This document shows, piece after piece, positions 7,712-42,713 of a stretch of DNA of 64,000 nucleotides. Every line of letters starts with the position of its first letter. Within the stretch, counting starts at the first letter, position 1. The DNA comes from Octopus bimaculoides. Taxonomy: Eukaryota. Below the pieces are notes generated by a model that was not told the origin of the DNA, did no database searches, and worked only from the letters and a program-made list of their open reading frames with translations. The DNA lies in contig NC_068993.1 of the NCBI RefSeq assembly GCF_001194135.2, positions 730,730-794,729 of the forward strand, given 5' to 3'. The translations under genes were made by a program, and so were the position numbers.

Positions 7712-8036
7712 TCACTGACTACGAACCGTTCGGCTATTTCCGGCAGTAACGTTATTGTTTCGAGTAGAAATGTTCGGAACTTGACAATTATTTTGTGTGT
7801 GAATGTTCTCGCCGCCCATTACAATCTCGAACGTTCGCTGTGCCAGCTTCCTGTTGTTGCAGTGTAGTGCGGTGGAGGCGGCGGCGGCTCACTTGGACAG
7901 ATGCAGGAGGCCAACACATTCTCTTCTTACTTCAGTGGCAGCCAGTAGTCGCAGTTGGTTCACTGCACAACTTTCACATATTTCGAACCGTTTTACGGAT
8001 CACTATTTCTATCGTTCTTTCGACTACAATTCTTTG
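7712..8036 (+). other. Candidate upstream (5' leader) exon, probably of the neurocalcin gene
   Basis: CpG-rich unique sequence ending in a strong donor TTG|GTGAGT (8037). A strong acceptor tttttctgcAG lies at 7710-7711, so the 5' edge could be a TSS or a splice site. I found no other + strand coding exon before 42315. The link to neurocalcin is inferred. Confidence 0.55.
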
Positions 8037-11000
8037 GTGAGTAGCAGAGTGCTTGTTTTTTTTTTTCCGTCCTTCTTTTCCACCCCCACTCTCATTAACA
8101 GATTTTGGCGACAAACACGACACAGCAGCTTCGATAGATATATATTTATACAGACACACACACGTATATTTATATGTGTGTGTGTGTGTGTGTTATATAA
8201 AGGAATGAAATTGATTTCGTGCCAAGGTGGTAGTATTCGATGTTGTTGGCATGGTGCTGGTGCCCTCCTCTGTTGCATTGATGCACTGTTGCGCATTGTT
8301 CCAACCACGAATGGCCATCACTGGCTGAAAACACGACCACAGAGACACGGACAGTAAATAAAAGAGAGAAGACAATATTTATCAATATAAAACTAATTAA
8401 AACCTCAAATATAAAATGTTAGGAAATCTAGAAAGGAAAAAAAAAAAAGGAAAGTTGTAAGAGAAATCGTTTGATTTTTTTTTTTCCTTTTATTTTCCTA
8501 ATGATTTCAGTCTTCGATAATTGATACATTCTAATTGTTTTATTTTTTTTGCTGTTTTTAATATCTATTTTTTAATTAATTAATTAGAAAGATATTGTAA
8601 GTTAACCTTTGGTGAAACTTCGAAGTCACTGCAACGTTTTTATTTGTTCTTCTGTCTTTAATATATGTTTTACCTTCCCACATAAAATGGTTTATATAAC
8701 AATTTATATAAGGTTAATATTTAATTTTATTTATCTGACATTAATTTATATTTTATATAATATTAATATTTTAGTCATATATTTAACTCCTGTAACACCG
8801 TGGAAAATATTAAAAAGAAAAAAGAAGGAAGCTTTAATTTCTTCTGACACAATTGTTTCACCATGCTGTTTGGGTGTCAATAGATTTTCTTTAAGATTCC
8901 TTTTAATAAATTTCTCTGAAATTCTTTCAAGTCTCGGGAAACTTTCAGTCTTAATCGCCACGCTACGTCGTGTGAAAAGCACAATTAAAATCTAGGTCCA
9001 TTGTTAATCACTGATATTTACATTTCATTTCCTGGCTTTTAATTAATGATTTCTTCCTCGTACACACATCCTTCCTAAATAAACTCCTACCTTTCTATGT
9101 TTCACCATTTCTACAGATGTTGGCATCGACTTTAATGTCAAAGTAAAGCCTTTCAGACACATTTTAATATTACTTCCAGTCGTTGATTCCTCAGATCTTT
9201 AATAGAAAGAAGCATTTGTCACTTTGTTATTTTCTCTCTTCTCTGGGTGAATCTTCTCTAGCAAAACAGACCAAATTCTTATACAACTGAATTGAAATGA
9301 TGTCTGTAGAGAAACTGGTTGAAATATTGATCCTGTAAAGCTGTAGATATATATTATTTCACCTAAGCAAATAATAGAAATTCGTGTTATTTTTGATAAT
9401 TTGGCGAAAATTAAACTGAACCTGAAAGGTAAGAGAAAATAACTGTTTTACACAAGAGTGAACATTTCGAGCCATAAACTGGTTTCCTATACGAAATGGT
9501 ATTTATTGATCTTACAAGAATAACAAATAAGTGAAAAAAAGGGGGGAAAAAAGAAAGACCATCACCACCACCACCACCACCACAACAACCACCACCACAA
9601 CAACAATAATAATAAAAAAATTACAAGTAAATGAACAGTGAAAGCTGTAGGAGCTGCTTTGGTTTGTGAATATTGGTTTTATTGTTGTTAGTGTCTTTAT
9701 GATGGTTTTAATTTGTACTTGGTGTTATACCTTATCCAGCAATCGATACATACATATAGGTGTGCGGATATGTAGAAGTGTGTGTATATAATAGGTGTGT
9801 GAGTGTGTAAAGTGTGTCAATAAAAACACCAGATCTGTCTGATCAAACCACTTGCCTACCATTACTAAACGTATTTAGGTTTTATCAATTAAGAAATCAC
9901 TTTTTCCTATTTACCATATTGAACATTATTTGGGAGAATTTTTTTTTTCTATTGTGCTTCTCTCTCTCTCTCTCTCTTACAACCCAAACCATAATATGTG
10001 TGTGTGTGTGTTTTTTTCTTGATTTACAGATAAAATAACTTTTCTAATCGCCATTTAATATTGTGACATAAAAAAACCCGAAAATGTTTTACTTTCAACA
10101 AATCAATTTTTATTGAAGAAAAAAAAAACACTTTTTATTTTTCTGTTTCCAACTTTTAATTTGTTTATATTTATTTTTAAATGTTTGTTTTTAAATTTTA
10201 AATTAATTGTGAATATATTTTTTAATTTGCAAGTCGTATTATTTTTTGCTATTATTTCGATGTTAATTCTATATTTGGTAAAAAGGAATCGAATGATTGC
10301 GAAGAGAAGTAATGGAAATTGATACCATTGCATGTTTAGTGATGATGCTTAGTGCTGCCTTTTGGCCAAAGTGTTAATATCTGGGTAGTGTAACCCAGAT
10401 AATCTCTATAACCACCAGCATAATAACCACTGCCTCAAATACACTGGTCACTGCCCACCACCACAACTTCATTGATTCCTTCCACAATAATATAAACAAG
10501 TTTCTTGCAGTAGAATCATTCATAATTTTCTGGAGGAGGGAAACTCGCCATAAAAACAGCTTTTCGTAATTTTTTTCTGTGTGTATTTAAAATGAATTTT
10601 TATATTCAAACGACTAATTGTTGATAAGAAAAAAAAAATTATGAATTGAACAGGTAAAAGTAATATTAAAGAAATAGTGACAACTGTTTCGTTGAGTTTA
10701 ATTAGGTTTATATTGGGTTGTCCAGAGAGTACTCTAAATTTAGTTCATCATCTCTAATTTATTCATTACACAAATACTAATTCCATTCACAACATATTTT
10801 GTTTCCAAAAATGACTTAAGCAATTTCATAGGAATTCGTTCCCCTCAAGTTTTTAACATCAAAGATTTTGTTAATAATTTGACCGCAATTGTTTTCGCAA
10901 CCACCTGCTTCATCATCGTCATCATTATCATCATCGTCTACAGCTATTTGCCAAATGAACGAACATCAAATTTGTTCAATGGCCCATGCTGTGTGTGTGT

Positions 11001-13519
11001 GTGTGTGTGTGAAATTATTGCCTCTTTATTTAATAATTCCTCGAAAGAAACCTACAAAGCGTAGCTTTTATTCCTCGTCTCTCGATTCATTGGGAAAAAT
11101 AAATATATTAATGTGTTTATTATATATTTTTAAAAGAGAATTTCCTTTGTTTTCTCCGTTCTTTCATTCAAAGAAACGATTTTAAATTCTGTAGAAAAAA
11201 AAAAGACCCTACAAATTTTGGCTGCATTCGACGAGCTTGTTGATTTTAAATATTTATTCAATGTTATTCTGCATTATGTACTTAGAAGCAGGGAAAGACG
11301 AACGGGTAGAGATTTGCTTGTATCTGGAAAATTAAAGAATGGAATTGCTATTTGTCGTATTAAAAAATACCTTTTAGTAATCCTAGAAAATAGATTTGAG
11401 AATATGGTTCAGCTATTTCGAAAGACTATTGCTGAAAATAGATTTGTTTTCTGCTCGCTGTAAATGATATTCTGGTGTCATTGCAGTCAAAAGACAACTG
11501 GCTTGATGTTTGAAGATGGAATAACTGTTCCAATTAGGCGAGCTTTTCAACTAAATAAGCTTTCTACTCGTTCTAAGACTACAGCCATGCAGCATCTCTT
11601 ATAATTTAAATAATTTCGAGGAGCTATTGTAGAATTCAAGGTTAATTTAGTTGAATCAATTTATAAATTGGTGAAGAAGTGAATTGTCAGAATGAGGTAT
11701 TGAAGTTTTATTGCTGCTGTATGTTTTCACACGTGATTGCTTTAAATGTTACCTGATTGGAAAGGAAAAATCTAGTTTGTGAACGGAAAACTAGAATTTC
11801 GGCTGACTTTAAATGGAAATACCAAAATATGTCATTTTTGCATTGAATTCTGATTTCAATTTCTTTGGCATCTTTAGAATTGAAACATATTTTTAAAAAT
11901 TATAATTCTTACCTTTCTCTAACCTTACTTCTCTCTCATGTGGAGAAAAAGGATGGTGTGTTCTAGACTGGGCTGAGAAATTCATCCTCATCAATTGAAT
12001 GGTTTAACAATTTTCAAAGGCAAAATTCTGCTAGATTGACTTTTGGTTGTTTACCTCTGGAAGAAACATAATTGGTATACAAGGATAATTGATTTAAAAT
12101 TGTTTTGTTGGTTGTCTTTGAATTTCTGAGTAAATTTAGCAATTTTAATCCTCATCTTAAAAGATTTCTGTCTGAAACCAAAGCTATTGATGCAGAATGT
12201 GAAATCTCAGAAGTTTGAAGCTTTAAAAGTGTGTGTTTATAGTGTGTGTGTGTGTGTGCGATACTTTCTAGTTTAGCAAGTTTAATCAGGTTAGATTTGA
12301 TGTAACTTTAAAATTTTGTCGATTGAATCTAATCCACCGCCCCCATGATTGTCTCTCTCTGCCTGAATGATTCTTCACCTCTCTATTACATACTTTCTCG
12401 GGGTTAACTACCATTTCCATTCCCTAAGTTTTACTAACATTATGAAGTACCATGTCTGATATTTGCTCATTTTCTCAAGACAATTCCTCAATTGTCAACA
12501 CCTGATATTTCTACAAACTTCTACAGGTTTTTGTGAACAGCAGTTATTGGTTCATCTCCTTTTCAAACTGAATCCTGGCTTTAATCCAAGCTGTTTGGTT
12601 TGAGGCTATATGTCTACAGGATCTATTGATACAACAACTGGCAATGTTTGTTCATTCTGACTCTGCATTCAGTGACATTACACATTTTTACATCAATTAC
12701 TTGCACCATTCATAAATTATTGATCTACCTTTATACCTGTTGAACTAAACATATTCTAATTACTAACGTGTTCTATGAGTTATTACTAGAATAGTTTATC
12801 AACTTGATTAACCTCATCTTCTGTACACCTGTCGTCACTGCTATTTTAATTAGTGTTAATTATTATCATTAACCAGTATATTTTAGTTGTGAGTCCCTGT
12901 TGTCAACCCTTGTACCCTGCACCCTTCCCTGTCCATTATGGCACAATGATGTAATTATATATTTGTGGGCAGGTACCTCACTTAACACAATATTTCCATA
13001 ATGGTGTTCTTATTACACTTTTCTAATGTCAACCACTTTTAGTATTTATTCCCCATTAATTCAAATATCACTTTATTTACTCTTTCCCTGCATTATAACC
13101 TTTTTTTTTGGTCTCTTCTATATACACCTTCATTCAATCCCCATTAACAGAAGTGATAAAAATGCAAAGTTTCAATGACGGATATTCATTTGTTTCATCA
13201 ACAAGTTTTTGCCATAAATTATCACATGAATGGCTGGGTATCTCTCAGGTCTACCCTTAACCGAATTCTCAGGTAGAATCAGTAGAACAAGGCTGGTCCT
13301 TTATATTACAGGTCTATCCCATCTGATGGGTTTTGCCACAATTTCCCTCTATTCACTCGTAAAACTTGGGTCAACCAGTGGCATGGATAAAAGGACCCCT
13401 AACCCCACCAGTTACCTTCTAGGATTAAACTTGGAGCCTAGTGATTGCAAAAGAAACTTCCTAACCATTTGGCTATGCTGTGTCCTCAGACCCATAGATT
13501 ATACTTACCTTTGCAATCT

Positions 13520-13895
13520 ATTATCTTTTACCTGTTTCAGTCATTGGAGTGTGGCCATGCTATGATGCCACCTTGAAGGGTCTTTGTCAAATTGACCCCA
13601 GTACTTTTCTCTTTTTAAGTCTGGTACTTATTCTATTGGTCTCTTTTACTGAGCCACTAAGTTACAGGGACATAAACAAACCAGGGTTGGTTTGTCAAGT
13701 GATGGGGTGGGGGTGGACAAAGACCAGTGGACCCATACAACAGGTTTCCTCACATTTTCTGTCAACCAAATTCATTCATGAGGAATTGGTCAGCTCAGGA
13801 CTGTAGTAGCAGGTGTCCAAGGTGCCACTCATTGAGGCTGAACCCAGAAGCTCATGGTTGCAAAGTGAGATTGTTAACCACACAACCAGGCCTGC
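13520..13895 (-). mobile_element. tRNA-derived SINE, family A, near full length
   Basis: Reverse complement of the head seen on + at 59440-59610 and 30735-30860. Other minus copies at 22400-22575 and 29095-29425. Confidence 0.7.
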
Positions 13896-16529
13896 AGATG
13901 CAAAATTATGCAAAGGCAACAACTTCATAAATACCTTAACTCGACATTGTCTTTTTAATCTAATTAATCCCCACTTAATCTAAATTCTTAATCTTTCTAC
14001 TTGCATGTAGCTGGTTAACTCCTTTATTCCAACCAAATTCTTTTTTTTTCTCCCAACAAATGGAACTAATGGTCTGGAGTCTTTCCATTTCTTTTTTTAT
14101 CATTCGATAATCTTTTTCCTTGTCCTTTCTCTAATCTTATTGGTATCCTTCTTGCTATTTTTGTTCCTCTCTAAGTATTCCTGGTTTTATTTTATTGAAA
14201 TTGAACATTGCAATTGGCGAATGACAGTGTCCTTGTAATTGGCAGATCTCAAGGCATAGGGGACTGTCTGAATCCAATGCAGAACAAATATCTCCAGCAA
14301 TTTCATTTGAAGTCCACCAGTTTTCTAGTTTTCTCACAGATTTTCAAAGAGCATGGCTGTGTGTTTAAGAAGTATGTTTCCCAACCACATGATTTCAAGT
14401 TCAGTCTCACAACATGACACTTTGGCAAAGTGTCTCCTATAATCCTTGGGCCAGCCAGTCCCTTGTGAGTGGATTTGGTAGGTGGAAATTGAAAGAAGTC
14501 TGTTGTATACATGTATATATTTGTAACGTATATGTGTGCATGGGTGGGTGTGTGTGTCTTCACATCACATGTTAGATGCAAACAAGTGTCATTGTCATTG
14601 AAATGTTGTCGTTCACTTCCAATCTTTTTTTTTGTAAAGATGACCAACCATGGGAAAATATGAGCTTACTTGGAAACGGGTGAAGTTTGTGAGAGGAATG
14701 GCATCCAGCAATAGGAAATCTGCTTTGATAAATTTTGTCTGATTCGGGCAAGCATGGAAAAGTAGGCCTAAAAATGATGATGATGTGTGTGTGCGTTCAA
14801 AAATGTCTAAGGTGCAAATTGAAATAAGGAGTGAAAAACTGCAGTAAGGAAGACAGATTAACAGCTTCCACTTGACATTATTTCAATATTTTGGAGTTAA
14901 GACTCCATTTTCAAGAGAAATGGAGGCATGTTGCTGAGTTGGTGTCTTTTACTTAGATTCTAGTTTTGCTTCTTGATTTCAATTGTATTGATCACTTTGA
15001 AGATCACACAACTCAAACTACACACGTGTGTGTGTGTGTGGGTGTGTAAGCTCACAAAGCAGGAACAGAATGAAGATGTGTGCATTAATTTTTAATGTTT
15101 TCCTGAAGCACTTGCTGCAGGATTTTGTCTCTGAGAAAAAATTCTCTAGAGACATCAACTTCAAGTGTATAAAAACAACCCCATTGAGCCAAACTGCAAA
15201 CAATGTTGGCAGACAACCAGACATGGTGTTTTAGTGTGATTTTTACCTTCTCAGTAATAGAAACTGCATTGGTCATCTGGAACTAGGCCAAAGCTTTGTT
15301 CATAACAAATATATATATATATATATATAAACACAGATGATGAGCTTCTTCCCAGTTTCCATTTACTGAATTCCACTGATACTCAAGGTTAGGGTTGAAG
15401 AATCACACCCAGCTGTTGTGCTGAGGAATTGAACCCAGAACCTTATGATTGACGAGTAAATGTGTTAACCACAGAGCCATGTAAAATATTTATGTACATT
15501 CCTTGCTGTTCTCTGCGGACAATGCTTCAATCTCAAACCAACTTCTTGTCATCTCTAATAACTTTTTAGTTTTTTTTTTGTTTTTAGCTCATTAAATATA
15601 TTTGGTGCTATTTGAACCTTTGCAGATTTGCTGCTGTAGACAACACAACTGTCTCTTTTACAGATCCCCTTTTCTATTCATACACCTTACACCCTTATAT
15701 CCTCCTCCATCCACACTCTCTGTAAAGTGCATCTCTCACCATATACCTCACCCCAATCCCACTTGTTAACTGTTTCAATAAATTCTTGTCCATTGATTTA
15801 ACCATTAACTTTCTGTCACAATCCCCTCCCCCCACCCATCGTTATCACCATAATTAGTCTTCAAGTGATTGTGGCTAATTTATTAAAGAATAATTCTTAT
15901 TTATTAAGCAAGCTTTATGTAATTCCTCCATAGAACCATCAAAACTGCCTGCCACTCCCTCGTCAGTCTTATCTTCTAATTCATTCTAATTAGGTCGACC
16001 ACTTTTCATTTACTTTTTGGAGGGAGTGGGGTGGGGTGGGGATGAACACTTTGTCCTCTCTCTTTATCTCACCTTTTACCATTTCTGTCTCTATGTTCGT
16101 TAAATTGATGAGATAAAGAGTGGACAGGCGATGTTGTTACTCATTTAGGAGAAACATCTGACCCCTAATTGCATTTAACAGGGGCTTCATCTTTGAGGAT
16201 CTCTCCTTATGTCATTTGTGGCTTTGTCAACAACTGGTGGAACCCTAAAATATTGTAAGCCATTGGAGAAAGGCAAGGCATGACATTTTTTAGGGCCTCA
16301 AAAACGGGAGAGAGGGGGAGAGGGGCAGTAGACCTGACTTGGGTGCTTGCAAGGATGTAAACCCTACTAAAGGTGCCTAGAGTGTGTTGAGGGATGATGT
16401 TAAACTGGTCCAAGGATTGTCTATCACCCAAGGAGGACACAGTGGGATTTGAACTCAAAATGCACAGGCTCAGAACAAACGTCCCTGAATAACCTGTCTG
16501 ATACTCTACACCAATTCTGCCAACCCACA

Positions 16530-17045
16530 GTCCCATTGTTGGTTTTTTTTATTTGATTGACCCTCAAAGGATGTAGGTAGGATTTGAACTTAGAATGCAA
16601 GGGGCTGGAATAAATACTGCAAAGAATTATTTCATACACCACTCTAACAATTCTGTCAATTCTTGTGGGCACAAGGCCTGAAATTTTGAAGGGAAGGGAT
16701 AAGTTGATTACATCAACTTCAGTGTTCCACTGGTAATTATTTCATTGACCCTCCCCCTCCTCAGTGGAATTTGAAGAAATGCTCCCAAGTATTTCGTCTG
16801 GTATGGCTAGGATTCTGCCAGCTCGTTACCTTAATGATAATAATAAGTTTCAAGTTTAGGGACAAGGTCAGTAATTGTTGAGGGGGAAAGGGTTAGTTGA
16901 TTATTTTGACCCAGTATTTGACTCCTACTTTTTGTCTTAGTCAAAAATGAAAAGCAAAGTTGACCTTGGTAGGATTTGAACTCAAAATGTAATGAACCGG
17001 AAGAAATGCTCTGAAGCATTTTGTCTGATGCTCGAACGATTCTCT
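16530..17045 (-). mobile_element. Cluster of ~3 tandem family-C SINEs
   Basis: Repeated acaaggccagcaa..gattacatc..cccagt..ggatttgaactcagaa. Further minus copies at 17885-18085, 39335-39420 and 54380-54500. Confidence 0.7.
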
Positions 17046-17309
17046 CTCTCTTTTTTTTTTTTCTTCCCTGAAGAAATTCACTCGTACGTCGGTTTATGTC
17101 TTCTACTTGGAAAAGAATAAAAATTGATTATCAGAAATCTGTTCCAAGTTGAAGAAATATTTTAGAAGTGTTAAATATGTCTAGCTGCATGTCAATTTAA
17201 GAGGAATTTTCTGCTTAGAGAATCAGAGAGTGGCACTGAATCACTTTTATTTATATTTTTAGAAACGCAGCAACATTAAGCTTGATTAACACTAAACTGA
17301 AAGACTATT

Positions 17310-17600
17310 TTTGAATGATTCAGTAGAGAAACCGATGCTGTAAGTATCTACTTTGAGAAGAGCTTCTGCCAATTTGTTTTGGTCTTCGACACACTTCACA
17401 AAGAAGTGCTCAAATGACCTAAAAATGAAAGGTTTAAGGGCCAAGCCAAGTGGCACTCATAATGTTTTGTACTCAGAAAATCTCTTGTATTTAAAAATTC
17501 TTCCAGAATTATTGAAGCAGTTTTGGCTTTGTTTTGCTCTGTTTCCTTGTACAAGCATTTAATGATATTGACAGAATATATTCTTACAAATTCTTTAATC
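17310..17600 (-). pseudogene. Decayed coding-like remnant with a CARD-like helix pattern
   Basis: Two overlapping frames read IKCLYKETEQNKAKTASIILEEFLNTRDF and FRSFEHFFVKCVEDQNKLAEALLKVDTY. The resemblance to CARD C-terminal helices is by eye only. Confidence 0.25.
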
Positions 17601-28493: not shown

Positions 28494-28639
28494 GATATAC
28501 CCTCCAGCCTTCATCAGGTGTCTTGGGGAAATTTCGAACCTGGGTTGTCATTCCTAAGGTATGCCCATAGGCATATGGTGTAGTGGTTAAGAGCGTGGGC
28601 TACTAAGCTTAAGGTTCCAAATTTGATTCCAGGCAGTGA

Positions 28640-28671
<32 letters not shown>

Positions 28672-31226: not shown

Positions 31227-31399
31227 GTGTGTGTATGTATGCGTGTGTATGTACGTGTGTATGTATGTGTAAATAAGTGTAAGTACTGTGGACAAGGCTG
31301 CGTGGTGTTGAATTATAAAAAAATAAAAAAATACACATTAAGTACAGGACATCACCAACTAGTGGAAAGCATGTAAGCACACGAGAGTTAAGTATGTCA

Positions 31400-31770: not shown

Positions 31771-34700
31771 AATAGATCGTGTGTGTGTATATGCATGTAT
31801 GTATAGAAAATGAATACAGGAAATGTAGTCAGTATTATCACTTAGCATAATGCACATGTTTCATGAGATTGGCAGACATCAGTAATTTGGTTATGGGAAC
31901 ATTTTGCTGGTAGCATTACTCAACAAAAATACAACACAAAAGAAAAATCGCTTTTATGTATCAGTGTGTGTGAATAAGAACAGTTATTATAGGGGGAGAG
32001 GGGGAGAAAGTATGACAGGGGTGTGATTGGGGGGTGGGGAATCTTGCACAAAACAATATCAGCGACAATAACAACAACAATAGAAATAAAAATGTAGTAA
32101 AAATAATGGGAAATAAAGGAAAGCTTAGAAACAGTCTTCGGTCAGTGGTGGCCATTGCAGGAAGAAAGAGAAAGAATACAATGAAAAACAAAGCAAAAAA
32201 ACCTTGGCTTTGATGATTTGTGGCACTCCTATAAAGAAAGAGTTTAGCTGAGAGAAGGTGGCCAGGTTCAGGAGATCTTAAAACTGGCCATTGTGGAAAT
32301 GTGGTTTGGTGTTAGAAGTCCCCCCCCCCCTCCACACAATCCTATATCAATGAATGCACTCAAACACACAAACCCAAACAAACTCATAATGTGTGATAGT
32401 TCCTAAGCTGTGGGACACCTGTACAATCTCCAAATGAATGCACAATAACAAGAGTAATAACGGTTTCAAATTTGGTGGGGGGATGGTTTTGAACCTCTTG
32501 CCAGAAGACAAGTGTAAAGCAATGGTTATTATCAAGGAAACCTCCAACTCTGGGCCATTGCAAGCAAATTAAAACAGCTTCAGGTTTATGATGTAACTGG
32601 AAGCAATCATCTAATCTGGGTTTATTGTCTACACACACACACCTTGCATGACAGAGCTGCTCAAAAAAATGGAATGCCATGTGAAATTATTGCAGAGATA
32701 AACTAGACAGGCAAGGAAGTGCCACTGTCAATAAAGTGCATGTTTATCTTGAATGAATGGTTTATGGTATACTCTGCCATATCAACTTGGTCTACTAAAA
32801 AGCTCTAAGAATCATAAAAATTCTACGTGAATCAACCAAAACCTTGTCATCAACATTTTACATGAGATGCTTTAACAACAGGATCTTATAAAATATGTGA
32901 GTTCCAATCTGTCGGAATTAGAGATATGCTTCCACTGTACCAGTAAAGCCATTTTCTATAAATGGAATAATTCTTTCCCACCTGTACACACCCACTCACT
33001 TCCTGGTGCCAAGATCAACACATTAGATAGAACACTATGGCACTTTGCTATAAATATATGGAAACAGACTTGCAGAAGTCTTCATTTGAAACCATTTTAG
33101 TTGACTGGAAAGTGTGCAAATATCTTGTTACTCACCAAAATGTAGGAAACCAGTAATTAACTTTATGGACACCATTTTCAGTTTCTATATCCAATGATGC
33201 TGTTCTTCAAGAATGCATGTAATGAACCCCCCCCCCACCAATNNNNNNNNNNAATGAACCCCCCCCCCACCAATATGTATCTTTTGGATACATATTTGGA
33301 GTGGGGGGAGATTTATTACATATATGTCTGTGTATACACTTCAGGAATGTCTGTGTCTATTTAATACAGGTGTATCTGTTTCTCTATCCACATTTGTATG
33401 TACATATATAATGTGTGTGTGTGTGTGTGCGCACACGTCAAGAATATGCTCCATGTATCCATGCTAAAACTATAAATATTAAAAATAATTCCCACCAATT
33501 CATTATAATGATGCTAATTGAATCCATGAAATTCAATATAAAATACAGTAAACAGCTTAATATTTTGATGTTAGACAGACAGACATTTTTCTATAACCTC
33601 CGACCTGTGTGTGTGTGTGTTGTGGTATGGTTATAGCATGAGTGTGAGGGTGTGTTTGTTGGAGAACTGATATGTAGACAAACACACCTCCTTCATTGCA
33701 AAGTTGAGTACTGCACACACACACACACACACACCAAGGACTTGCACAAAGTTTCCATTTGCCATATTTCACACTGAAGCCACTGGTTAACTTGAGGTGC
33801 TGCACATTGTGATTGAACCCAAAACATTGTAGATACACATTATGATTGAACCCATGACATTTGTAGATATTTTAGCATTTATATTATCGAATGTAATCCT
33901 TATTTATTCCCATTGTTTTGAATTAATCATGGATTGTCTTGTAGCTTTAAGATTTTGATTGTTTATTTTTAGAACAACATTTTAGGGTAGGTGTGAGAGG
34001 CCAGATCTGGTTAATTTGAACATAAAACAGGTGGAATATTTGGACCAGATGTGGTTAGTTTAACTGGTAAAGGGTTAAAGATTATTCTAGAATCTAACAT
34101 GGTACATAGAACATCTCAAGTCTCCTCACCTTACTGTAACTATGGCTTTGTTGTACAGTATCTTTCCATATATCTCAGCTGCTTGGAGCACTAACGTTTT
34201 CTAATTCTTCCTCCAAATGATTTCTGTATTTCTGAGAATACTGTTTTGCTGGACATAATCCCAAATCCTTTGATAACCCTCTATTCTTAAATTACGAATC
34301 CTTTTTAAAGCAAACTTATCTTTTACAAAAATTTGAACAACTGAATTATTTTTCTGTAAATTTCTGTTCCATAATTTCCTGTATAAGACTTAAGAATTTT
34401 CATTGCACTTTGAGCAAACTGATAATTAAAAAAAAAAAAAAAAAAAGTCAGTATTATTATTTTGTATGACTTTCATGAGTGTTAATAAAGAATATAATAG
34501 ACTGTAATCTTAATTATTTTATAATACTCTCATTAATTTTAATATAGAATAGTTTACAGTCCTTTCTAATTATTTACCTGTATTTTGACACTGAAATTTG
34601 AGAATCTTTTTTTTCTTGGATGATATTTCTTTCTCTTCAGCTGTTCCTTCCCATCTATTCCATTATCTCAATTTTGTCTATTACTTCCTAATAGTAATGT

Positions 34701-36399
34701 TTCCAGGTTACCAAACACCCTCGTCTATTTTTAAAATTGAAACTATCTTCATTAAATCTTTATTGACTAAAGACTCTACAGCCGTTGACTTTGATTTCCA
34801 TGTTGAACTCTGGAAGACAGATGTTTCTGGTGAGGTTTTTTTAACCACCTCAGCTGCCTCAAGAGAACTACCAACTCCAATGTCAGCCTGTTCATTTATT
34901 TGTCATCGCATGAAATGTGAGTCAGCAGTTTCAGTTCACTCCTGACAGCACGGAAAGCATTTGAAGCTCAAGGAAATCTAGTCTATCCATAAAGGTCACA
35001 TTACAAATGTAACCCAACTTTTATTCTTTTCCCTTCACCTTACTGCTATTACTGCTGTTGCAGTCTGTGCTACACAAGAAAATAACAGGTTTCTTTTGCA
35101 ATTAACCTGTTATATTTGTTTTTGATGTTGTAATAGTTTTATTTTAATCAATGTGACCAATGGATTAAAGGATCTTGTCACTGGTGAGATCATTTGTTTG
35201 TCCTGTATGTGTGCAGATTGTAAATATTTTGTTAATCTCTTCAAGTCAGTGCAGCTGAGATGGTCATCTTATTATTACTTGTCTGGTTTGTCGGCTTGAT
35301 TAAATTGCTTCGATTAACAAAGGATCTCTCTCTCTCTCTCTGTATATATACACATATATATATCTCTGTGTGTGTGTGTTCTGCTAGCTATAGTCAATTT
35401 GTTCCTTCAGGTGATGGTCTTTCTCAATGACTTTGCTGTTCTCTCAACTGAGTTAATGCAATTTGAAGACTTGCAAAGTGAGTGCAGTGTCAGGCTGCTG
35501 CTAATGCAATTGTCCTCTCCATCCATTAGTTGCACTGCAATTGAGTCTAGTGTTTCTACTTACTCTTCCACTACATACTGAACAAGCTTACCTTCCTGTT
35601 GTTAGTGATGTGTGCAGATTAGATGACGAGAAAAAACCCCCCCAAAAAAAACATACTTTAATCTTTACAATGTCACTCTTATCGTTTTTTCATTTTAAAC
35701 CACATTACAGCATTTCTCACTTTTATTCCTTCTGATTAAAAGTACCAAATAGTTTTTTAAATGCAAAACTTCTTTAGAGCACCCGATCCAAAATAGAGTT
35801 GTACTAGCTTCATGTATCATACTTAGTAGAGTTAACGTAAGCTGTTGTTGGTCCATTGATTTTTCTAACAGATGGCTCACACACATGCACTCACAGTTAC
35901 ACACTCACACACACACCATGGCACATTGTAATCCAATCACTATAAAATAATATTCTGCAACTCTAACGTGGAGGTTAAGAAAAGATTATGAATCAATCGA
36001 CAGCTACCCGGGCATTTGTTTGCAGTTAGAAATGGAAGAATATCGATGTGAGAAATATTGAGGTTGTCTGTTGTTTTTTCCCTCTCCTCAACACCAGAAG
36101 ATTCTCCACACAGTTTTCCTCTGAAATGTTAAGAAAATCCCAGCAAAACTGCTGCTGTGTTCTTTACAAAGCTTCTTGCAATGTAAAAATAACGTTTAAA
36201 GTTAGTCGAAAACCAAGTTGAAGTCCTTATCAGTGTTAATGTAGTTCAGAGACCAACAACTAATTTTTATAATGGCCTTCTGTGGAATTTTGCTTTACAT
36301 CTGCCCATGGACCACATCTATCTGACATATAAAAATACCCCTATGTATCACTGGTATTCCTTACATAAGTAAAAATTAAGTTGCGACACAAAAGGCTAT

Positions 36400-36520
36400 C
36401 TAAAAGCCATCAGCTGCTCATTGGCTCACAAATCTATTAAATTTTAAGCATTTTTAGAAAAAGTCAGGCCCGTAGAGAACCCGAGCGTCTCATCTGGGAA
36501 TTGTAGCCCACCTGTTGCTG
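36400..36520. promoter_or_regulatory. Possible alternative promoter or enhancer with a ZNF143/Ronin-type motif
   Basis: CTGGGAATTGTAGC (36494-36507) is the reverse complement of GCTACAATTCCCAG, a 13/14 match to ACTACAATTCCCAG. Nearby are an inverted CCAAT (ATTGG, 36420-36424), E-box CAGCTG and a few local CpGs. Confidence 0.35.
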
Positions 36521-37359
36521 ACATTCTAGTCAAACTCTCTGCCAACAAATAAAAAAAACAAAAAGGAAATTAATGGAAAAGATCATTAATTAAAGTTGGT
36601 TAATTTAGATCAGTTTGTGTGGCATCTGGAGATGTACCAAATGTTTTGTGCAAATACTTCTTCTCTACGTGTCATACAAACTTCCAATAACTTGCTACCA
36701 TCTTTTGCTGCAACTAATTACTGATATCTGAATCTTCGTTACTCTCTCCTTAGCAGCTCTAGTTTAGTTTTCTTCCTCTCCGTTAATAGTTGTTTCTAAA
36801 TATTCTTTTAATAGTGACAACTCGGTCTTTCTGGTCTTGTAGACTGTTCTGGAAATGGTAATGAAAAGTTCTGTCCTATCTTCTAATAAGTCTGTCATAA
36901 TGTCTAAACATATTCTACAGATGTCAAATGGTGAGGGTAAAACATAGAACCTGTGTTATAATACAGGTCCCTCCTCTTCATTACCCTTATCTTGCACCCT
37001 GTGGTTTACAAGACTGACCCCATTAGTGCTGGTGACACCATGAAAAAGCATCCCCAATTCTCCCTGCCAAGTGATTGATGTTAGGAAGGGCATCTCTGGC
37101 TGTAGAAACTGGGCTAAAACTTATTGAAGCTGTACCCTTAGTCAGATGCCTTTCCAGTCACCAACCCTTGATTTTCAAGTAACATACATTTCTATTTCAC
37201 TGGCCTTCACACCCTGAAAACACTGAGCTAGTCTACATTATTATTTATGGCAAAGGTGCCCAGCCCTGCCATAACAAAGTGTGGCTTATTTTTTTTTGTT
37301 TTTATATCCTGTATTTTGTGAACAACACTTGTCTTGGTCATGGCTTTCTAATAGGCCAA

Positions 37360-37393
<34 letters not shown>

Positions 37394-39749
37394 CAAATGT
37401 ATATTGGTGTGAACAGTAAACTAATGCATGAAACTTGTAATCAAGCATTCTATTCATCATCATCATCATCATCACCTTTGTTTGCTTTTCCATGCTTTCA
37501 TGGGTTGGACAGTTTTTTTTTCCCAACTGTGTCTCACCTTTGTTGTGTCCCTTTTATTTTCTCCTTTGTGATTATCAACACCCTAAAATCAGCTTCCATC
37601 ACTGTCCATGTCTACCTTGATCTTACACTTCCCCAGTTTTCCTCCACCTGGATTTCCTGGCAGTCCTTTCTCCAAACTCATCCCATGTAATAGAAAATCG
37701 GAAATGATGCCAAGCAGACAGCACTGTATTTGTTGCAAATTTTGATCTCTGATTCCTTTCTTTTCAAGCAATAAAAACTATAAAACACAAAATTGTTTAC
37801 GGCTGTCATAAATAGATCCCCAACCTGTGGAGGCACTGAAAGTAAAATGACTAAAACAATATTACGGTAATCAATATATTTTCATGTAATTCCATAGAAA
37901 ATTGTAAAAAAATTGAGTGGCAAACAACAATTTAGGTCATATTATTCCCAATTTGGTGGCGATGGGTTGTAAATGGATTAAAATGTTGAGCTGTGAGGTT
38001 TTAATGTCTTTTAATGTGTGCAGCAGAGTTCTTAACCTAAATTTCAATCTGTAAACAAACTGTGAAAGAATTTAGTGGTAAAAGAAATAGCGGAAGACCT
38101 TTTTATTGATGTTCTGATCAAATATGACTTAAAAGTAACAGTTCAGATTTAATTGGAAATGGCAGATGGTTTCAAGTAACAAATTTTATTGTGTATATTT
38201 CGGACGTTTGAAGTTAAGTTCCATAAAATTCCATGTTAGATTCACATGACGACTAATAATAAGTTTAGTGGATTTTATTGAGTAAATTTTCTTCAGTGTA
38301 TAAGTACAGTGTTTTCTGTCTTTTACAATACATGTTATAGTAAAACCTTGGCTATAATAATATTGGCAATGTGGATGAGTAAAACACAATCTCTTTGACA
38401 GGATTCTTTTTATTTTAGCAGCAGATAACAACTGTTTTGTGTAAGATGTAACTTTGTAACAAGCTAAGGAAAAGGAAATATAAAGAATCTCTCTCTCTCT
38501 TTCGCTCTCCCTCTCTCTCTCTCTTTCGCTCTCCCTCTCTCTCTCTTTCTCTCTCCTTCTCTCTCTCTCTTTGGAAACATAAAAGTTGAAGCATTGTTTA
38601 TTTATAACAAGGTCTGTCTTCTTTTGTTGTTGTCATGGTGATAGTTTGTTGAAGTCAAAGGCATATATATATATATATATCTCAGGCTGTGGGTGGGTGC
38701 ATGCCAGCTGAGCATGAAATGCACAGATATTACCCCCAGGGAATTTTTCAAATTGTTTTTTCTTCTTCATGCATTGTAGGATGGTTTTGTAAGTATTCAT
38801 AAATTTTGCTAAAGATTCACTGAGGAATTGTGAAAACGTTTTAGAACAGATAGGCATTGAGGCTTTATATTTGTGTATATAAAGTATGTATGTATATATG
38901 TATACAGTGAATTTTAGAGGAAACTCTTCAGTCTTATCAGTGACATTTCAGTGAACTGTACCCATGCCATGAAATTGTCAGTGATCGGGGCGACATCTAT
39001 GGACAGCCATAAAAATAACAACACTCCCCGACACTACAGAGTTGGCCTGTTGTTTCTCTGTTGCTGGGTGGATGGGTGGTGGTGAGCAGATATTGGGAGA
39101 CCTGTTCAGTTCCTAACAGTTTATAGAGAAATGGAAAAGGAAGATAATAATTCAGTGTCCATCAGATATGCTCTATCCTGTTAATATATTAACAGAGTTG
39201 AAACTCTCTACAGTAAACACTTTTATCTTCATGGAGCTGAGTGTAATTAACCTCTCTTACTAATCATTTTTAAAGTGTAGAGAAGCTTTATCAGTAATGA
39301 GTATTTGATATTTTATTAAAAAACAAATTACTGTTTCAAATTTTGGCTCAAGGCCAGCAATTTTGGGGGAGGAAGTAAGTCGATTACATCAACCCCCAGT
39401 GTTCAACTGGTCCTTATTTTCTCTTCCATTGTTTCCTTCTACAGGGATCTCCTGATACTTCTTTATTCTACTCTCATCCATGATGATGATGATGATGATG
39501 ATGTATCACATGTTCGCACCAGTGCAGTCTTTTCTCTTGCACAAACGACGACGACATCTGATCCACTTATAAAGAATTTTTCTCTCAGCTTCCCTGTGCC
39601 CATCATTCATAGACCCTAATTAACAGGACACCAGCATGGAAAACAGATGTTAAATGATGATAATTCAATGGAGTAGGCTGTTCTTTTCTTTTTCTTTTCC
39701 TGTCCACCCTTTATACATCCCCCACTATTCAATACTCGCTTCCAGTTCC

Positions 39750-40125
39750 TTTGCAACAACACACTTCATCTACGAGTCTCGTACAACTTTGTTCATAGGA
39801 GAAGCCTTCTGTTGTTCCTTGAAGTAAGAGACTATCTCAGTGTGTCCCATCCTCTTCTTATTGTGGTTACTATGCCTTCAGTAGGTTGTCTTTTAGACAT
39901 TTCCAGTTATTGGCTTCATTATTCATCTTTGTTGCTGACTCCACATTGTAAATATAACCTGGAATCTCTGTGATCACAGAGTCATCTACATCTTTCCTTC
40001 CATGCTTGTAGGAGTTGAACAAGTCTTTATCAGTTCCTGACCTGTTGCAAGTCCTTACCTCATTTTTGAGGTTCAGCATCCTGATTCCACCTTTTACCAT
40101 TTCCCATGTCTTTTTTCTCATGTCT
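39750..40125 (-). mobile_element. Highly decayed RTE-like fragment
   Basis: NWKCLKDNLLKA resembles the endonuclease-RT linker of RTE elements, and the piece lies next to the RT fragment. Confidence 0.4.
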
Positions 40126-40198
40126 CTAGATTCCTTCCATTGGCACTTCTTTCACAAATTGCTATCATTCTTCTACATCACCTGCCTGTACCACCACC

Positions 40199-40234
<36 letters not shown>

Positions 40235-40569
40235 TCCTTACACCTGATTCCTTTTCAGTCAGTTGTTCTTTATTCTCTCTCTCTCTCAACTCATTTATGC
40301 TCTGTCGTTCAGTCACACTAACATTGCACATCCATGCTGCTCATTTCATTTCTTTCTCATCTTCATAGGCTCTCTGCACCCAATGTTCACTTTTTACTAC
40401 CCTTCAACATCACATTCCATACTCATGTCTCAAACAATTTAAGGAGAACCCTTTTATTGCCTGGAGATGTTATAATAGATCTCTCAACATTTTCTTTTCT
40501 GTGCTTTACTTTCAGAACTTTCACCTCCACCGCTGATTAGGCCATCTAAGTAACAGAAGCTGTTGACTA

Positions 40570-40900
40570 CTTTTAGGGAGCCTTTCAGGTATTTCAAGGA
40601 ATTTATTTTATGGGTGCTTCTTGCACTGCCAACAATTTAGTTTTGGCAGGGTTTACTTTATGACCTCTTAATTCCATATTTGGTATTTCTTCTCTAATCC
40701 TTAAACATATCTATGAGAACTTGGTTATTAGCAAACTGAAGTTCCTGTAGATAGCTGGTCTTAAACTCATCCATCTAGCTACAGAACAGGGTCCTCTGTT
40801 TTAGACTTTCTCCTGGTCAATGAGTGCCAAGTATAGCGGTTGGCTCTTAGCTATACTCTTCCCCTGTAATTGTCTGACTTGTATCATATTTATTCATAGC
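40570..40900 (-). mobile_element. Degenerate RTE reverse transcriptase fragment
   Basis: QVRQLQGKSIAKSQPLYLALIDQEKV (40805-40881) resembles VRQLQEKYLAKxKPLYxAFVDLEKAF. ELQFANNQVLI (40709-40747) is a decayed ELLYADDLVLI. Confidence 0.7.
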
Positions 40901-42314
40901 CTATGCTCTATTGGTTCTCTCAATTTCTTATGAAACCTTTCTTTATGAAGGTAGGGTGTGATTTGAGGGAGATTTGGTTTCTCTTTTTGTCTAGCAGATC
41001 AAATAGCCAGACAGAAGTGCCATCATCCTCAGAAGTAACCCCTTCCCTCCATTTGAGACAGTCCTCACAACTCCTCTCCAAAACTCATGATCCTACATTA
41101 TCACATCACAAGGTCTTGCATGTCACATTCTGAATCTCAAGTGGTTACATCTTGATAAGAGAGTTGGTGATTTTTCTCACCAGGTGGCTGAGGTCTCCAA
41201 AACACAAATGATAACCCCTAAAGCAGTACCCAACAAATTGTACTCTACATTGTGTCACTATTTGAGAGAGGAATGGAAAAGTTCCATGAGTTTCAGTGTT
41301 AGGTGGGTTTTCTATGAAAGGTTTTATGCCCTTCATGGAAACCAAGTCTAACAGCTACCTGATAGTCTTTTGATTTTTGGAAACCTTTTAGGAAGTGTCC
41401 ATATTTCTGAACCATACAAAGGAATTCAATTGATTTTAAAGGATTGTCTTCAATTAGATGCCTAAATAGTAAGCAATTCAAAGCAAGCTGACTATACAGT
41501 TGAGAAAATCCCTTATTGATCTCATCACATATGAACCAAAGAAAATACAGTTGGAATGTAAACTATTGATGCCATTAAAGTCCTTAACATTATCCTTAAG
41601 CTTTCAGATGTAACTTCAGGAATTCTTCAAGTGCTTTTCTTTTTATTATTCTTCAACTATCAGTGGATACAGTAAGTAGTAAAACTCTTCTTTTTACTCC
41701 AAGACAATTCTCATGCTATCCATCCATGCATGGAACTAACACGTAAATAATCTTGCACTTTAGGTTTAATTCCTTAAATGATGCATAGAGGGCACTAGTT
41801 TCCAACAGTGGGGGTGGGGTGGGGATTTGCCAAAATGATCAAAATAACAGAATCCTTTCATCTTTGGCATCAAAAGATGAAACAGATTAAATGTAATAAT
41901 AATAAATTGAGTAGATGAGACTTCCTCATTGGCCCACCACAGGTGATATTGGCTAATCCAGGGCCAACCTTCACTGCCTTTTTGGATGGGCAGCTACAAT
42001 AAGACAGTGGTCTTTTAATTTTTAAGTAAGGGGAAGTGTGATTTTCTGGAGAAATACTTGCAATTTCTTCCCAGCTTAGGGGCTGCATGGAGTTTACATT
42101 TGTTGAGTTGTATCAGTGTAGGGGAGAGTGAGATTGAGTGGTCGGACGGAGGCTGCATGGTTGTTGTGTTGGGAGGGAAACTAGACATTAGCAGCCTCGT
42201 GTTGTGTGCAAGAAAGAAGTCTCCACTGGTATGGTGGTGATATTTCTAGCTGTATATAATATTTGTTCTAGCAGATCAGGTTGATGATGAGATAATGCTT
42301 TCATCTATTTTCAG

Positions 42315-42335
42315 TTTGGTTTTTGTGAAAGCAGT
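42315..42335 (+). other. 5' portion of the first coding exon, downstream of acceptor ctattttcAG (42313-42314)
   Basis: Pyrimidine tract plus CAG 21 nt upstream of the ATG implies an upstream exon. A second possible acceptor is gcAG at 42333-42334. Confidence 0.65.
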
Positions 42336-42713
42336 ATGGGGAAACAAAACAGTAAGCTGAAGCCTGAGGTTCTTGAAGATTTGCGCAGAAATACAGAATT
42401 TTCTGAAGTGGAACTACAAGAATGGTATAAAGGCTTTTTGAAAGATTGCCCGAGTGGGAATTTATCAGTTGAAGAATTTAAAAAAATATATGGAAACTTC
42501 TTCCCTTATGGGGATGCTTCAAAATTTGCAGAACATGTATTTCGTACTTTTGATACAAATGCAGATGGTACAATAGATTTCCGTGAATTTATTTGTGCTT
42601 TGAGTGTGACATCAAGAGGGAAACTTGAGCAAAAGTTACGCTGGGCGTTCACCATGTATGATGTTGATGGAAATGGTTATATCTCTCGCCAGGAAATGCT
42701 TGAGATAGTCACT
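42336..42713 (+). CDS. NCALD: Neurocalcin homolog (NCS family, Drosophila Nca / vertebrate NCALD-HPCAL1 group), coding exon 1, codons 1-126
   Basis: Translation [16 protein letters not shown]...EMLEIVT closely matches neurocalcin as I recall it. It has the MGxxxS myristoylation motif, disabled EF1 (DCPSG), EF2 [12 protein letters not shown] and EF3 [12 protein letters not shown]. Strong Kozak context (agtATGg). Ends at phase-0 donor ACT|GTAAGT (42714). The symbol indicates subfamily, not strict one-to-one orthology. Confidence 0.96.

What the first reader, a model, noticed from the sequence alone, without database searches (positions are those of the whole stretch)
7803..42338. Upstream ATG splices exactly in frame to neurocalcin: predicted 85-aa N-terminally extended, non-myristoylatable isoform
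Seen: ATG 7803 opens 78 sense codons ending precisely at the phase-0 donor (8036|GTGAGT). The acceptor at 42315 adds TTT GGT TTT TGT GAA AGC AGT (FGFCESS) and then the neurocalcin ATG, with no stop, predicting a 276-aa protein. The upstream ATG has a weak Kozak context (tgaATGt) and the canonical one is strong (agtATGg), as expected for leaky scanning. Established: neurocalcin-type sensors need Gly2 myristoylation for the Ca2+-myristoyl switch, so the extension would remove it. The extension (MFSPPITISNVRCASFLLLQCSAVEAAAA..., Ser/Ala/Arg-rich) could act as a targeting peptide, much as KChIP N-terminal variants change function. A second acceptor 20 nt downstream (gcAG|T, 42334) would put this ORF out of frame, giving a possible splice toggle. 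Two short uORFs (7770-7784, 7901-7948) lie in the same exon. My rough chance estimate is a few percent, so this is suggestive rather than proven, and the exon link is itself inferred.
Basis: partly seen in the sequence, partly recalled or inferred. Interest (0 to 1): 0.72.

Follow-up and report, generated by a model that had tools for sequence, protein, structure and literature searches.

The report
In-frame upstream ATG, octopus neurocalcin leader
The predicted 276-residue "extended neurocalcin" is in the sequence, but it is the isoform X1 that NCBI's pipeline already predicts for Octopus bimaculoides, and the extra 85 residues look like an untranslated leader that happens to be in frame, not a conserved protein segment.

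Summary
ATG 7803 opens 78 codons that end at the donor 8036|GTGAGT. The acceptor at 42315 adds 21 nt (FGFCESS) before the neurocalcin ATG at 42336. The spliced ORF is 276 aa. The window is Octopus bimaculoides chromosome CM046613.1. The 276-aa protein is identical to RefSeq XP_014773385.1, "neurocalcin homolog isoform X1", whose gene range is exactly window 7803-47407. The prediction is therefore already in public annotation.

Nothing suggests that the extension is a selected coding sequence:
- It has no homologue in searches of 5.8 billion clusters and 1.84 billion representatives.
- O. sinensis and Argonauta hians have only the 191-aa product on record.
- The 21-nt linker is 22 nt in Argonauta. 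In Sepia esculenta mRNAs it is 53 nt with an in-frame TAG.
- Its composition is unlike the coding sequence (no lysine, reversed GC-by-codon-position pattern).
- A second frame of the same exon is open for 89 codons, and the 7803 frame stays open for 184 codons into the intron.
- About 1-3% of shuffled leaders give a comparably long in-frame extension.

Most likely this is a non-coding leader exon with three upstream AUGs, and any extended protein is a minor, unselected by-product. Both assembly gaps lie inside the 34-kb intron and do not affect the frame. Interest is low.

The parts
7712..8036 (+). Upstream leader exon of the neurocalcin-homolog gene. The 3' end is fixed by the donor TTG|GTGAGT. 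The 5' end is uncertain: 7712 is only where an acceptor-like motif ends, and the true start could be a TSS nearby or further upstream.
   Evidence: Sequence. The RefSeq isoform X1 CDS starts at 7803 and needs the 8036->42315 junction.
7770..7784 (+). uORF 1: ATG TTC GGA ACT TGA (4 codons plus stop). It is in the same frame as 7803 but is closed by TGA.
7803..8036 (+). In-frame upstream ATG plus 78 open codons. This is the extension segment of RefSeq isoform X1. The start context is weak (T at -3, T at +4).
7901..7948 (+). uORF 2 (15 codons plus stop), in the +1 frame and nested inside the extension ORF.
8037..42314 (+). 34.3-kb leader intron. It contains both assembly gaps named in the finding (27124-27227 and 33243-33252).
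42315..42335 (+). 21-nt non-coding linker at the 5' end of the first coding exon (would read FGFCESS). It is identical in O. sinensis, 22 nt in Argonauta, and 53 nt with an in-frame TAG in Sepia esculenta.
42333..42334 (+). Second AG, a hypothetical alternative acceptor. Only 50% of the 20 nt before it are pyrimidines. Using it would make the 7803 ORF an 84-codon uORF that overlaps the main ATG.
42336..42713 (+). Coding exon 1 of the neurocalcin homolog (Met1-Thr126). It starts MGKQNSK, the N-myristoylation consensus, in a strong Kozak context.
47210..47407 (+). Coding exon 2 (Ala127-Ser191) plus the TAG stop.
7690..7711 (+). Pyrimidine-rich tract ending in CAG (ttttttatttgtttttctgcag). It looks like a 3' splice acceptor, so the leader exon may be internal.
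   Evidence: sequence only, no transcript evidence

Best explanation
Window 7712(?)-8036 is a non-coding 5' leader exon of the Octopus bimaculoides neurocalcin-homolog gene. It is probably one of several alternative leaders, since RefSeq lists three further protein accessions for the 191-aa isoform X2. It is spliced over a 34-kb intron to the first coding exon at 42315. Its second AUG (7803) happens to be in frame with the main ORF with no stop in between. NCBI's automatic annotation therefore reports a 276-aa isoform X1, because it takes the longest ORF. The functional product is the canonical 191-aa, Gly2-myristoylated neurocalcin that starts at 42336. My inference about translation of this leader is as follows. 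Ribosomes first meet the 4-codon uORF at 7770. They then meet the weak-context AUG at 7803, the out-of-frame 15-codon uORF at 7901, and finally the strong-context main AUG. The leader thus mainly lowers or tunes main-ORF translation through leaky scanning and reinitiation. Any N-terminally extended, non-myristoylated protein would be a minor, lineage-specific by-product not kept by selection. What is shown: the ORF, the splice-site consensus, the identity to the RefSeq model, the absence of homologues, the non-coding composition, and the linker's lack of frame conservation. What is inferred: that the junction is used in vivo, where the TSS lies, and how ribosomes behave on the leader.
For: 1. 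The exact 276-aa sequence is XP_014773385.1, isoform X1, found only in O. bimaculoides. The 191-aa form is isoform X2 and is identical in three Octopus taxa and Argonauta hians. The gene range on record is exactly 7803-47407, and the window matches CM046613.1 with no mismatch.
2. In O. sinensis and A. hians the longest product on record for this gene is 191 aa.
3. The extension has no homologue. No candidate was found among 5.8 billion clusters. An exhaustive phmmer search of 1.84 billion representatives returned only two tandem-repeat junk proteins, whose best single alignment scores 29.6 bits. There is no Pfam hit, and every PDB match starts at residue 84 or later, the closest relatives at 85-87.
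4. The linker is under no frame constraint. It is 21 nt in Octopus, 22 nt in Argonauta, and 53 nt with an in-frame TAG four codons before the ATG in Sepia esculenta mRNAs. All 4-7 uATGs in the Sepia leaders open short uORFs, and none extends the protein.
5. Composition differs from the coding sequence. There are 0 Lys in 85 residues against 17 in 190. GC by codon position is 0.41/0.53/0.51 against 0.48/0.35/0.32. Purine at codon position 1 is 0.47 against 0.63.
6. Open frames here are not special. Another frame of the same exon is open for 89 codons. The 7803 frame runs on for 184 codons through the donor, a poly-T tract and a CA/GT microsatellite in the intron.
7. Chance alone gives an in-frame extension of at least 60 codons in 2.6% of shuffled leaders and at least 85 codons in 0.9%.
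They resemble each other only between close relatives, and none resembles the octopus extension.
Against: - An extension of at least 85 codons arises in only about 1% of shuffled leaders.
- The linker is identical in O. sinensis and open in a third Octopus-like species, although at 92-96% identity this is expected anyway.
- The decisive comparison, the exon-1 orthologue in O. sinensis or O. vulgaris, could not be fetched.
- AUG 7803 lies upstream of the main AUG, so if the TSS is upstream of it some initiation there is likely.
- Studies in human show that many extended proteoforms are translated without phylogenetic support (PMC9789052), so lack of conservation does not prove lack of translation.
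- No RNA-seq, Ribo-seq or proteomic data could be consulted.
Confidence: 0.75

Rival explanations
1. The extension is real and functional. O. bimaculoides, or the genus Octopus, makes a 276-aa non-myristoylatable neurocalcin isoform from this leader. Its N-terminal 85 residues would change localisation or partner choice.
For: The ORF is intact with consensus splice sites. A RefSeq model has the same CDS. The chance of so long an in-frame extension is about 1%. The linker is unchanged in O. sinensis. There is a moderately hydrophobic stretch, CASFLLLQCSAV, near the N-terminus, with a maximum Kyte-Doolittle score of 1.6 over 11 residues.
Against: There is no homologue of any kind. The extended product is absent from the O. 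sinensis and Argonauta records. The composition is non-coding. The start context is weak, with a uORF before it and another inside it. The linker frame is not conserved in Argonauta or Sepia. The hydrophobic stretch is weak for a signal peptide and makes no biological sense on a cytosolic EF-hand sensor. The one studied NCS variant that lacks the myristoylated N-terminus, human NCS-1 Var2, was expressed about 1000-fold lower at mRNA level, was not detectable as endogenous protein, and had no detectable functional effect (PMC5004852).
Confidence: 0.07
2. The leader matters as a translational control element. The three uAUGs (7770, 7803, 7901) reduce or condition neurocalcin synthesis from this transcript variant. 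What is selected is the act of upstream initiation, not the peptide.
For: There are three uAUGs in about 270 nt of leader, one with a purine at -3. Sepia esculenta neurocalcin mRNAs also carry long leaders (397-678 nt) with 4-7 uATGs and alternative first exons. uAUG-rich alternative leaders are therefore a recurring feature of this gene in cephalopods.
Against: No uORF is conserved in sequence or position between Sepia and Octopus; the leaders do not align (Smith-Waterman score 33 against a shuffle mean of 30 +/- 4). uAUGs are frequent in long leaders by chance. There are no expression or translation data.
Confidence: 0.25
3. The exon link is wrong or incomplete. The 7712-8036 exon may belong to another (non-coding) transcript. 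Alternatively, an obligatory exon lies between it and 42315, possibly in one of the assembly gaps, so the 276-aa ORF never exists in a mature mRNA.
For: No transcript reads could be examined. The intron is 34 kb and holds two gaps. None of the Logan assemblies in the collection carries the extended ORF or a fragment of it. The exon begins with an acceptor-like motif, so the transcript structure upstream is unknown.
Against: NCBI's model uses exactly this junction. Gnomon had no need for an ab initio extension, because the gene already has a complete CDS, so transcript evidence probably supports the junction (inference from how the pipeline works; my own knowledge). The donor GTGAGT and the acceptor (75% pyrimidine tract plus CAG) are good. 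The collection also holds no Logan contig with the exact 191-aa Octopus product, so the absence of the extended form is uninformative.
Confidence: 0.1

Closest known systems
RefSeq XP_014773385.1, 'PREDICTED: neurocalcin homolog isoform X1 [Octopus bimaculoides]'
   Same: Identical over all 276 residues, with the same start (window 7803), the same junction and the same stop.
   Different: Nothing differs; it is the same object. It is an automatic prediction with no experimental support that I could find (literature search: no paper on octopus neurocalcin isoforms).
Neurocalcin delta / hippocalcin / HPCAL1 (VILIP-type neuronal calcium sensors; PDB 1BJF, 5G4P, 5T7C)
   Same: Residues 86-276 align end to end with E about 1e-108 to 1e-110. 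The protein has the MGKQNSK myristoylation consensus, the degenerate EF1 (CPSG) and three canonical EF-hands.
   Different: None of the solved or canonical proteins has anything before Met1-Gly2. The 85-aa extension matches none of them.
Human NCS-1 variant 2, with an alternative N-terminus lacking the myristoylation site (PMC5004852)
   Same: It is an NCS transcript variant whose predicted product lacks the myristoylated N-terminus, and it is restricted to one lineage.
   Different: Var2 replaces the first 22 residues with 4 others through an alternative first coding exon. Here the canonical N-terminus is kept and buried behind 85 extra residues that start at an in-frame uAUG. Var2 mRNA was about 1000-fold lower, the endogenous protein was undetected, and no functional effect was seen.
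KChIP N-terminal splice variants
   Same: They belong to the same superfamily (E about 1e-50 to KChIP1), and their N-termini vary between isoforms.
   Different: KChIP variable N-termini are true alternative coding exons that are conserved among vertebrates (my own knowledge). Here the extra sequence has no homologue and no coding signature.
N-terminally extended proteoforms from in-frame upstream starts (e.g. PTEN-L; surveys in PMC9789052 and PMC4892431)
   Same: The mechanism would be the same: an upstream in-frame start, leaky scanning, and two proteoforms from one mRNA.
   Different: The accepted cases rest on Ribo-seq, proteomic or phylogenetic evidence. None is available here, and the little phylogenetic evidence there is points the other way.

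Membership tests
Neuronal calcium sensor family, neurocalcin/hippocalcin (VILIP) subgroup | About 190 aa with full-length high identity to neurocalcin or hippocalcin | tested here: met
   191 aa. E is 1e-108 to 1e-110 to HPCAL1, hippocalcin and neurocalcin delta chains over residues 1-191. Identity to human NCALD, whose sequence I recalled from memory, is 83-89% in tblastn.
Neuronal calcium sensor family, neurocalcin/hippocalcin (VILIP) subgroup | EF-hand domains | tested here: met
   Pfam EF-hand_7, EF-hand_1 and EF-hand_6 hits score well above their cut-offs, with three EF-hand_1 stretches. EF1 carries CPSG in the translated sequence; that this marks the degenerate EF1 is my own knowledge.
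Neuronal calcium sensor family, neurocalcin/hippocalcin (VILIP) subgroup | N-terminal Met-Gly-x-x-x-Ser myristoylation consensus at the true N-terminus | tested here: met
   The 191-aa product starts MGKQNSK. In the 276-aa model this motif is internal (residues 86-92) and could not be co-translationally myristoylated (established knowledge). Myristoylation itself cannot be tested here.
Selected N-terminally extended proteoform (in-frame upstream initiation) | In-frame upstream start with no intervening stop in the mature mRNA | tested here: met
   ATG 7803 plus 85 codons runs to ATG 42336 when 8036 is joined to 42315. The junction is taken from the RefSeq model and was not seen in reads.
Selected N-terminally extended proteoform (in-frame upstream initiation) | Conservation of the extension's frame or sequence in related species | tested here: not met
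   There is no homologue in either protein library. The longest product in O. sinensis and Argonauta is 191 aa. The linker is 22 nt in Argonauta, and 53 nt with a TAG in Sepia. The exon-1 orthologue in congeners could not be reached, so the test is incomplete at short evolutionary distance.
Selected N-terminally extended proteoform (in-frame upstream initiation) | Coding-like composition of the extension | tested here: not met
   There are 0 Lys in 85 residues. The GC1/2/3 pattern and the purine content at codon position 1 differ from the adjacent CDS. Another frame of the exon is open for 89 codons, and the 7803 frame stays open well into the intron.
Selected N-terminally extended proteoform (in-frame upstream initiation) | Evidence of initiation or of peptides (Ribo-seq, N-terminomics, mass spectrometry) | not testable with these tools
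N-terminal targeting peptide (signal or mitochondrial) | A hydrophobic core of adequate strength, or an amphipathic Arg-rich presequence, scored by a trained predictor | tested here: inconclusive
   Only a Kyte-Doolittle scan was possible. The maximum is 1.6 over 11 residues (CASFLLLQCSA), the net charge is +2, and there are 7 Arg and 0 Lys. SignalP and TargetP were not available.
KChIP-type alternative coding N-terminal exons | An alternative first exon that encodes a conserved N-terminal peptide replacing the canonical one | tested here: not met
   The canonical N-terminus is retained rather than replaced, and the added sequence is not conserved.

The most novel reading that the evidence does not exclude
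Octopus bimaculoides, perhaps with its closest congeners, has recently gained a true second neurocalcin proteoform. It would be a 31-kDa, non-myristoylated, N-terminally extended sensor made from an alternative leader by initiation at AUG 7803. Its output relative to the canonical protein would be set by leaky scanning, the two small uORFs and possibly the choice between acceptors 42315 and 42335. That would be a young, lineage-specific way of uncoupling a Ca2+-myristoyl-switch protein from membranes.
Probability: 0.06. Interest if true: 0.45.

Novelty: already known. Interest (0 to 1): 0.1.

Why it matters
If the extension were real, it would be a natural experiment in switching off the Ca2+-myristoyl switch of a highly conserved neuronal calcium sensor in a cephalopod brain. 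As matters stand, it mainly illustrates a familiar annotation effect. A longest-ORF rule applied to a leader with an in-frame upstream AUG produces an "isoform X1". Comparable predicted extensions are common among the NCS-family entries retrieved here (56 of 131). The practical lesson is not to count such extended isoforms as proteome diversity without evidence from conservation or translation.

Tried and rejected
I worked around this with cluster members.
2. I thought by eye that the Sepia leader and octopus exon 1 shared motifs. Smith-Waterman gave 33 against a shuffle mean of 30 +/- 4 (maximum 47), so I dropped the idea. blastn with word size 7 and nhmmer also found nothing.
3. Reaching the O. 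sinensis orthologue of exon 1 failed. The 10-kb flank of L011 reaches only to window 37584, and no called gene lies nearer. nhmmer of exon 1 against the 10 kb upstream in O. sinensis and Argonauta gave no hit.
4. The two phmmer hits, P0132 and P0133, are translated tandem repeats. Their E-values come from six summed weak matches, and the best single alignment of 29.6 bits is far below significance for a library of 2.4e11 residues. I rejected them as homologues.
5. Logan transcript contigs gave no test of the junction. The collection holds no Logan contig with the exact Octopus 191-aa or 276-aa product; the 130 contigs belong to cuttlefish (Sepia esculenta for SRR20545810; CDS 87.7% identical).
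6. The Rfam and tRNA scans of the window found nothing.
7. I did not run structure prediction on the extension. With no alignment depth it would give low confidence whatever the truth, so it could not discriminate.
Full report
**The observation**

ATG 7803-7805 follows directly on TGA 7800-7802 and opens 78 sense codons (MFSPPITISNVRCASFLLLQCSAVEAAAAH...SFDYNSL). These end at 8036, immediately before GTGAGT. At the other end a pyrimidine-rich tract and CAG (42312-42314) precede TTTGGTTTTTGTGAAAGCAGT, which is 21 nt and reads FGFCESS. The ATG at 42336 follows.

A tblastn search with human neurocalcin delta, whose sequence I recalled from memory, plus inspection of the junctions gave two coding exons. 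They are 42336-42713 (donor ACT|GTAAGT) and 47210-47407 (TAG stop). Together they encode 191 aa, or 276 aa when the upstream ORF is joined on.

The smaller details are also correct:
- The start contexts are gtgtgaATGt (weak) and agcagtATGg (strong).
- The two small uORFs are at 7770-7784 and 7901-7948.
- The second AG is at 42333-42334. Using it would turn the upstream ORF into an 84-codon uORF ending ...YGETKQ*.

**The assembly gaps**

The window has five N runs. The two named in the finding, 27124-27227 and 33243-33252, lie inside the 8037-42314 intron. They are far from any exon or splice site, so they have no bearing on the reading frame. The same gaps are in the public record, to which the window is identical base for base. 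The O. sinensis sequence I could fetch reaches back only to window 37584, so it does not span them. An unassembled exon inside a gap cannot be excluded from sequence alone.

**What the locus is**

An exact-sequence look-up gave three results:
- The 276-aa protein is XP_014773385.1, [quoted passage not shown].
- The 191-aa protein is isoform X2 (XP_014773386.1, XP_014773387.1, XP_014773388.1).
- The 191-aa protein is identical in three Octopus taxa and in Argonauta hians.

The gene on record for the 276-aa product lies on GCA_001194135.2 CM046613.1. Its range equals window 7803-47407 exactly. The window corresponds to about 730,730-794,729 of that chromosome. I found no literature on octopus neurocalcin isoforms.

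**Is the open frame more than chance?**

- In 20,000 dinucleotide-preserving shuffles of the 346-nt leader, 23% had some in-frame uATG extension. An extension of at least 60 codons occurred in 2.6%, and at least 85 codons in 0.9%.
- The exon is generally poor in stops. A second frame is open for 89 codons across it.
- In genomic sequence the 7803 frame continues open for 184 codons. It runs through the donor, a poly-T tract and a CA/GT microsatellite that are plainly intronic.

Openness as such is therefore weak evidence for coding. A per-gene chance of 1-3% predicts many such cases across a genome.

**Does the extension look coding?**

- It has no lysine in 85 residues. It has 7 Arg and is rich in Ser, Ala, Phe and Leu. 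The adjacent CDS has 17 Lys in 190 residues.
- GC by codon position is 0.41/0.53/0.51, against 0.48/0.35/0.32 in the CDS.
- Purine at codon position 1 is 0.47, against 0.63 in the CDS.
- The most hydrophobic 11-residue window scores 1.6 on the Kyte-Doolittle scale, which is weak for a signal-peptide core. No trained targeting predictor was available.

**Homology**

- A search with the full 276 aa returned thousands of NCS proteins. None covered the extension.
- A search with the extension alone found no candidate among 5.8 billion clusters.
- An exhaustive phmmer search with the 78 aa of exon 1 against 1.84 billion representatives returned two proteins. Both are translated tandem repeats. Their best single alignment is 29.6 bits, which is chance level for that library.
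- Pfam finds nothing in the extension.
- Every solved-structure match starts at residue 84 or later, the closest relatives at 85-87.
These extensions resemble each other only between close relatives, and none resembles the octopus one. This sample is not unbiased, but it shows how common such predicted extensions are.

**Comparative evidence**

- In O. sinensis (L011) and Argonauta hians (L012) the longest product on record for the gene is the 191-aa protein.
- The acceptor and the 21-nt linker are identical in O. sinensis. They differ by one base in a third Octopus-like genome (L013/L014, 92% identical). At that divergence this is expected without any constraint.
- In Argonauta the linker is 22 nt, so the phase at the acceptor shifts.
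- Ten Logan transcript contigs encode a neurocalcin that differs by one residue, with a CDS 87.7% identical. They come from cuttlefish; run SRR20545810 is Sepia esculenta.
- In these cuttlefish mRNAs two alternative first exons join a shared 53-nt leader. That leader has an in-frame TAG four codons before the ATG.
- All 4-7 uATGs in the cuttlefish leaders open short uORFs, and indels shift their frames between contigs.
- An N-terminal extension is therefore impossible in Sepia and not annotated in Argonauta or O. sinensis.
- The key comparison could not be made. The exon-1 orthologue in O. sinensis or O. vulgaris lies beyond the 10-kb flanks available, and no called gene lies nearer.

**Most likely mechanism**

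The upstream exon is a non-coding leader. It is probably one of several alternative leaders, since RefSeq lists three further protein accessions for the 191-aa product. The functional product is the canonical Gly2-myristoylated 191-aa sensor.

What follows is inference from the scanning model. On mRNAs with this leader, ribosomes first meet the 4-codon uORF at 7770, which has G at -3. Only 18 nt after its stop comes the weak AUG at 7803, which most reinitiating and many scanning ribosomes should pass. The out-of-frame 15-codon uORF at 7901 comes next. The strong main AUG lies 109 nt after that uORF's stop.

The leader probably dampens main-ORF translation. Some extended, non-myristoylated protein may be made, but nothing indicates that it is maintained by selection. 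I put this reading at 0.75. The alternatives overlap with it in part, and I scored each on its own:
- A functional extended isoform: about 0.07.
- A wrong or incomplete exon link: about 0.1.
- A selected regulatory role for the uAUGs: about 0.25.

**Comparison with what is known**

- The core protein meets every feature of the neurocalcin/hippocalcin subgroup that I could test.
- The proposed extended form would work like other in-frame upstream-start proteoforms. It lacks the conservation and coding signature that accepted cases have. Lack of conservation does not by itself exclude translation (PMC9789052).
- The nearest precedent within the family is human NCS-1 Var2, which also lacks the myristoylated N-terminus. 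Its mRNA was about 1000-fold less abundant, the endogenous protein was undetectable, and no functional effect was found (PMC5004852).
- KChIP N-terminal variants are conserved alternative coding exons (my own knowledge), so they are not a close analogy.

**Verdict**

The novelty class is already known, and interest is low.

Noticed in passing
window 7690-7711: A strong acceptor-like motif (ttttttatttgtttttctgcag, 85% pyrimidine) sits directly upstream of the leader exon. The exon may therefore be internal, with a further 5' exon upstream, possibly beyond the 1,070-N gap that ends just before window position 1.
   Followed up: partly
window 7803-8357: In genomic sequence the frame opened by ATG 7803 stays open for 184 codons, well past the donor and through a poly-T tract and a CA/GT microsatellite. 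This shows how easily long open frames arise here.
   Followed up: yes
L011 6652-9837 (O. sinensis) versus window 42172-42174: O. sinensis carries about 3.2 kb of extra sequence only about 140 nt upstream of the conserved acceptor. Its coding intron is about 8.7 kb, against 4.5 kb in O. bimaculoides and about 0.86 kb in Argonauta hians (L012). No ORF of 100 aa or more and no internal repeat was found in the insertion.
   Followed up: partly
L001-L010 (Sepia esculenta-type mRNAs), leaders 1-678: Cuttlefish neurocalcin mRNAs have long leaders (397-678 nt) with 4-7 upstream ATGs. At least two alternative first exons (L001 type and L008) join a shared 53-nt segment. Indels between contigs shift the uORF frames.
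   Followed up: yes
proteins P0001-P0120: Many database entries for neurocalcin, hippocalcin and HPCAL1 from vertebrates, insects and cnidarians are 230-360 aa 'isoform X1' or 'hypothetical protein' models with unrelated N-terminal extensions. Of the 131 proteins held, 56 have at least 15 aa before the MGK motif. This suggests a widespread annotation pattern.
   Followed up: partly
window 48000-52000: A very AT-rich stretch (GC 0.14-0.28 in 2-kb windows) downstream of the gene holds two assembly gaps of about 470-480 N (50071-50540 and 51457-51940), flanked by poly-A/T and microsatellites.
   Followed up: no
cluster of P0005: The 90%-identity cluster that holds the octopus neurocalcin also contains a sea-anemone protein (Exaiptasia diaphana XP_028513051.1, 193 aa). 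This shows how strongly the sensor is conserved across animals.
   Followed up: no
L011 14087-14524 (-), O. sinensis coding intron: A 145-aa ORF in sequence with no aligned counterpart in O. bimaculoides. It may be a remnant of a mobile element. It was not searched against any library.
   Followed up: no
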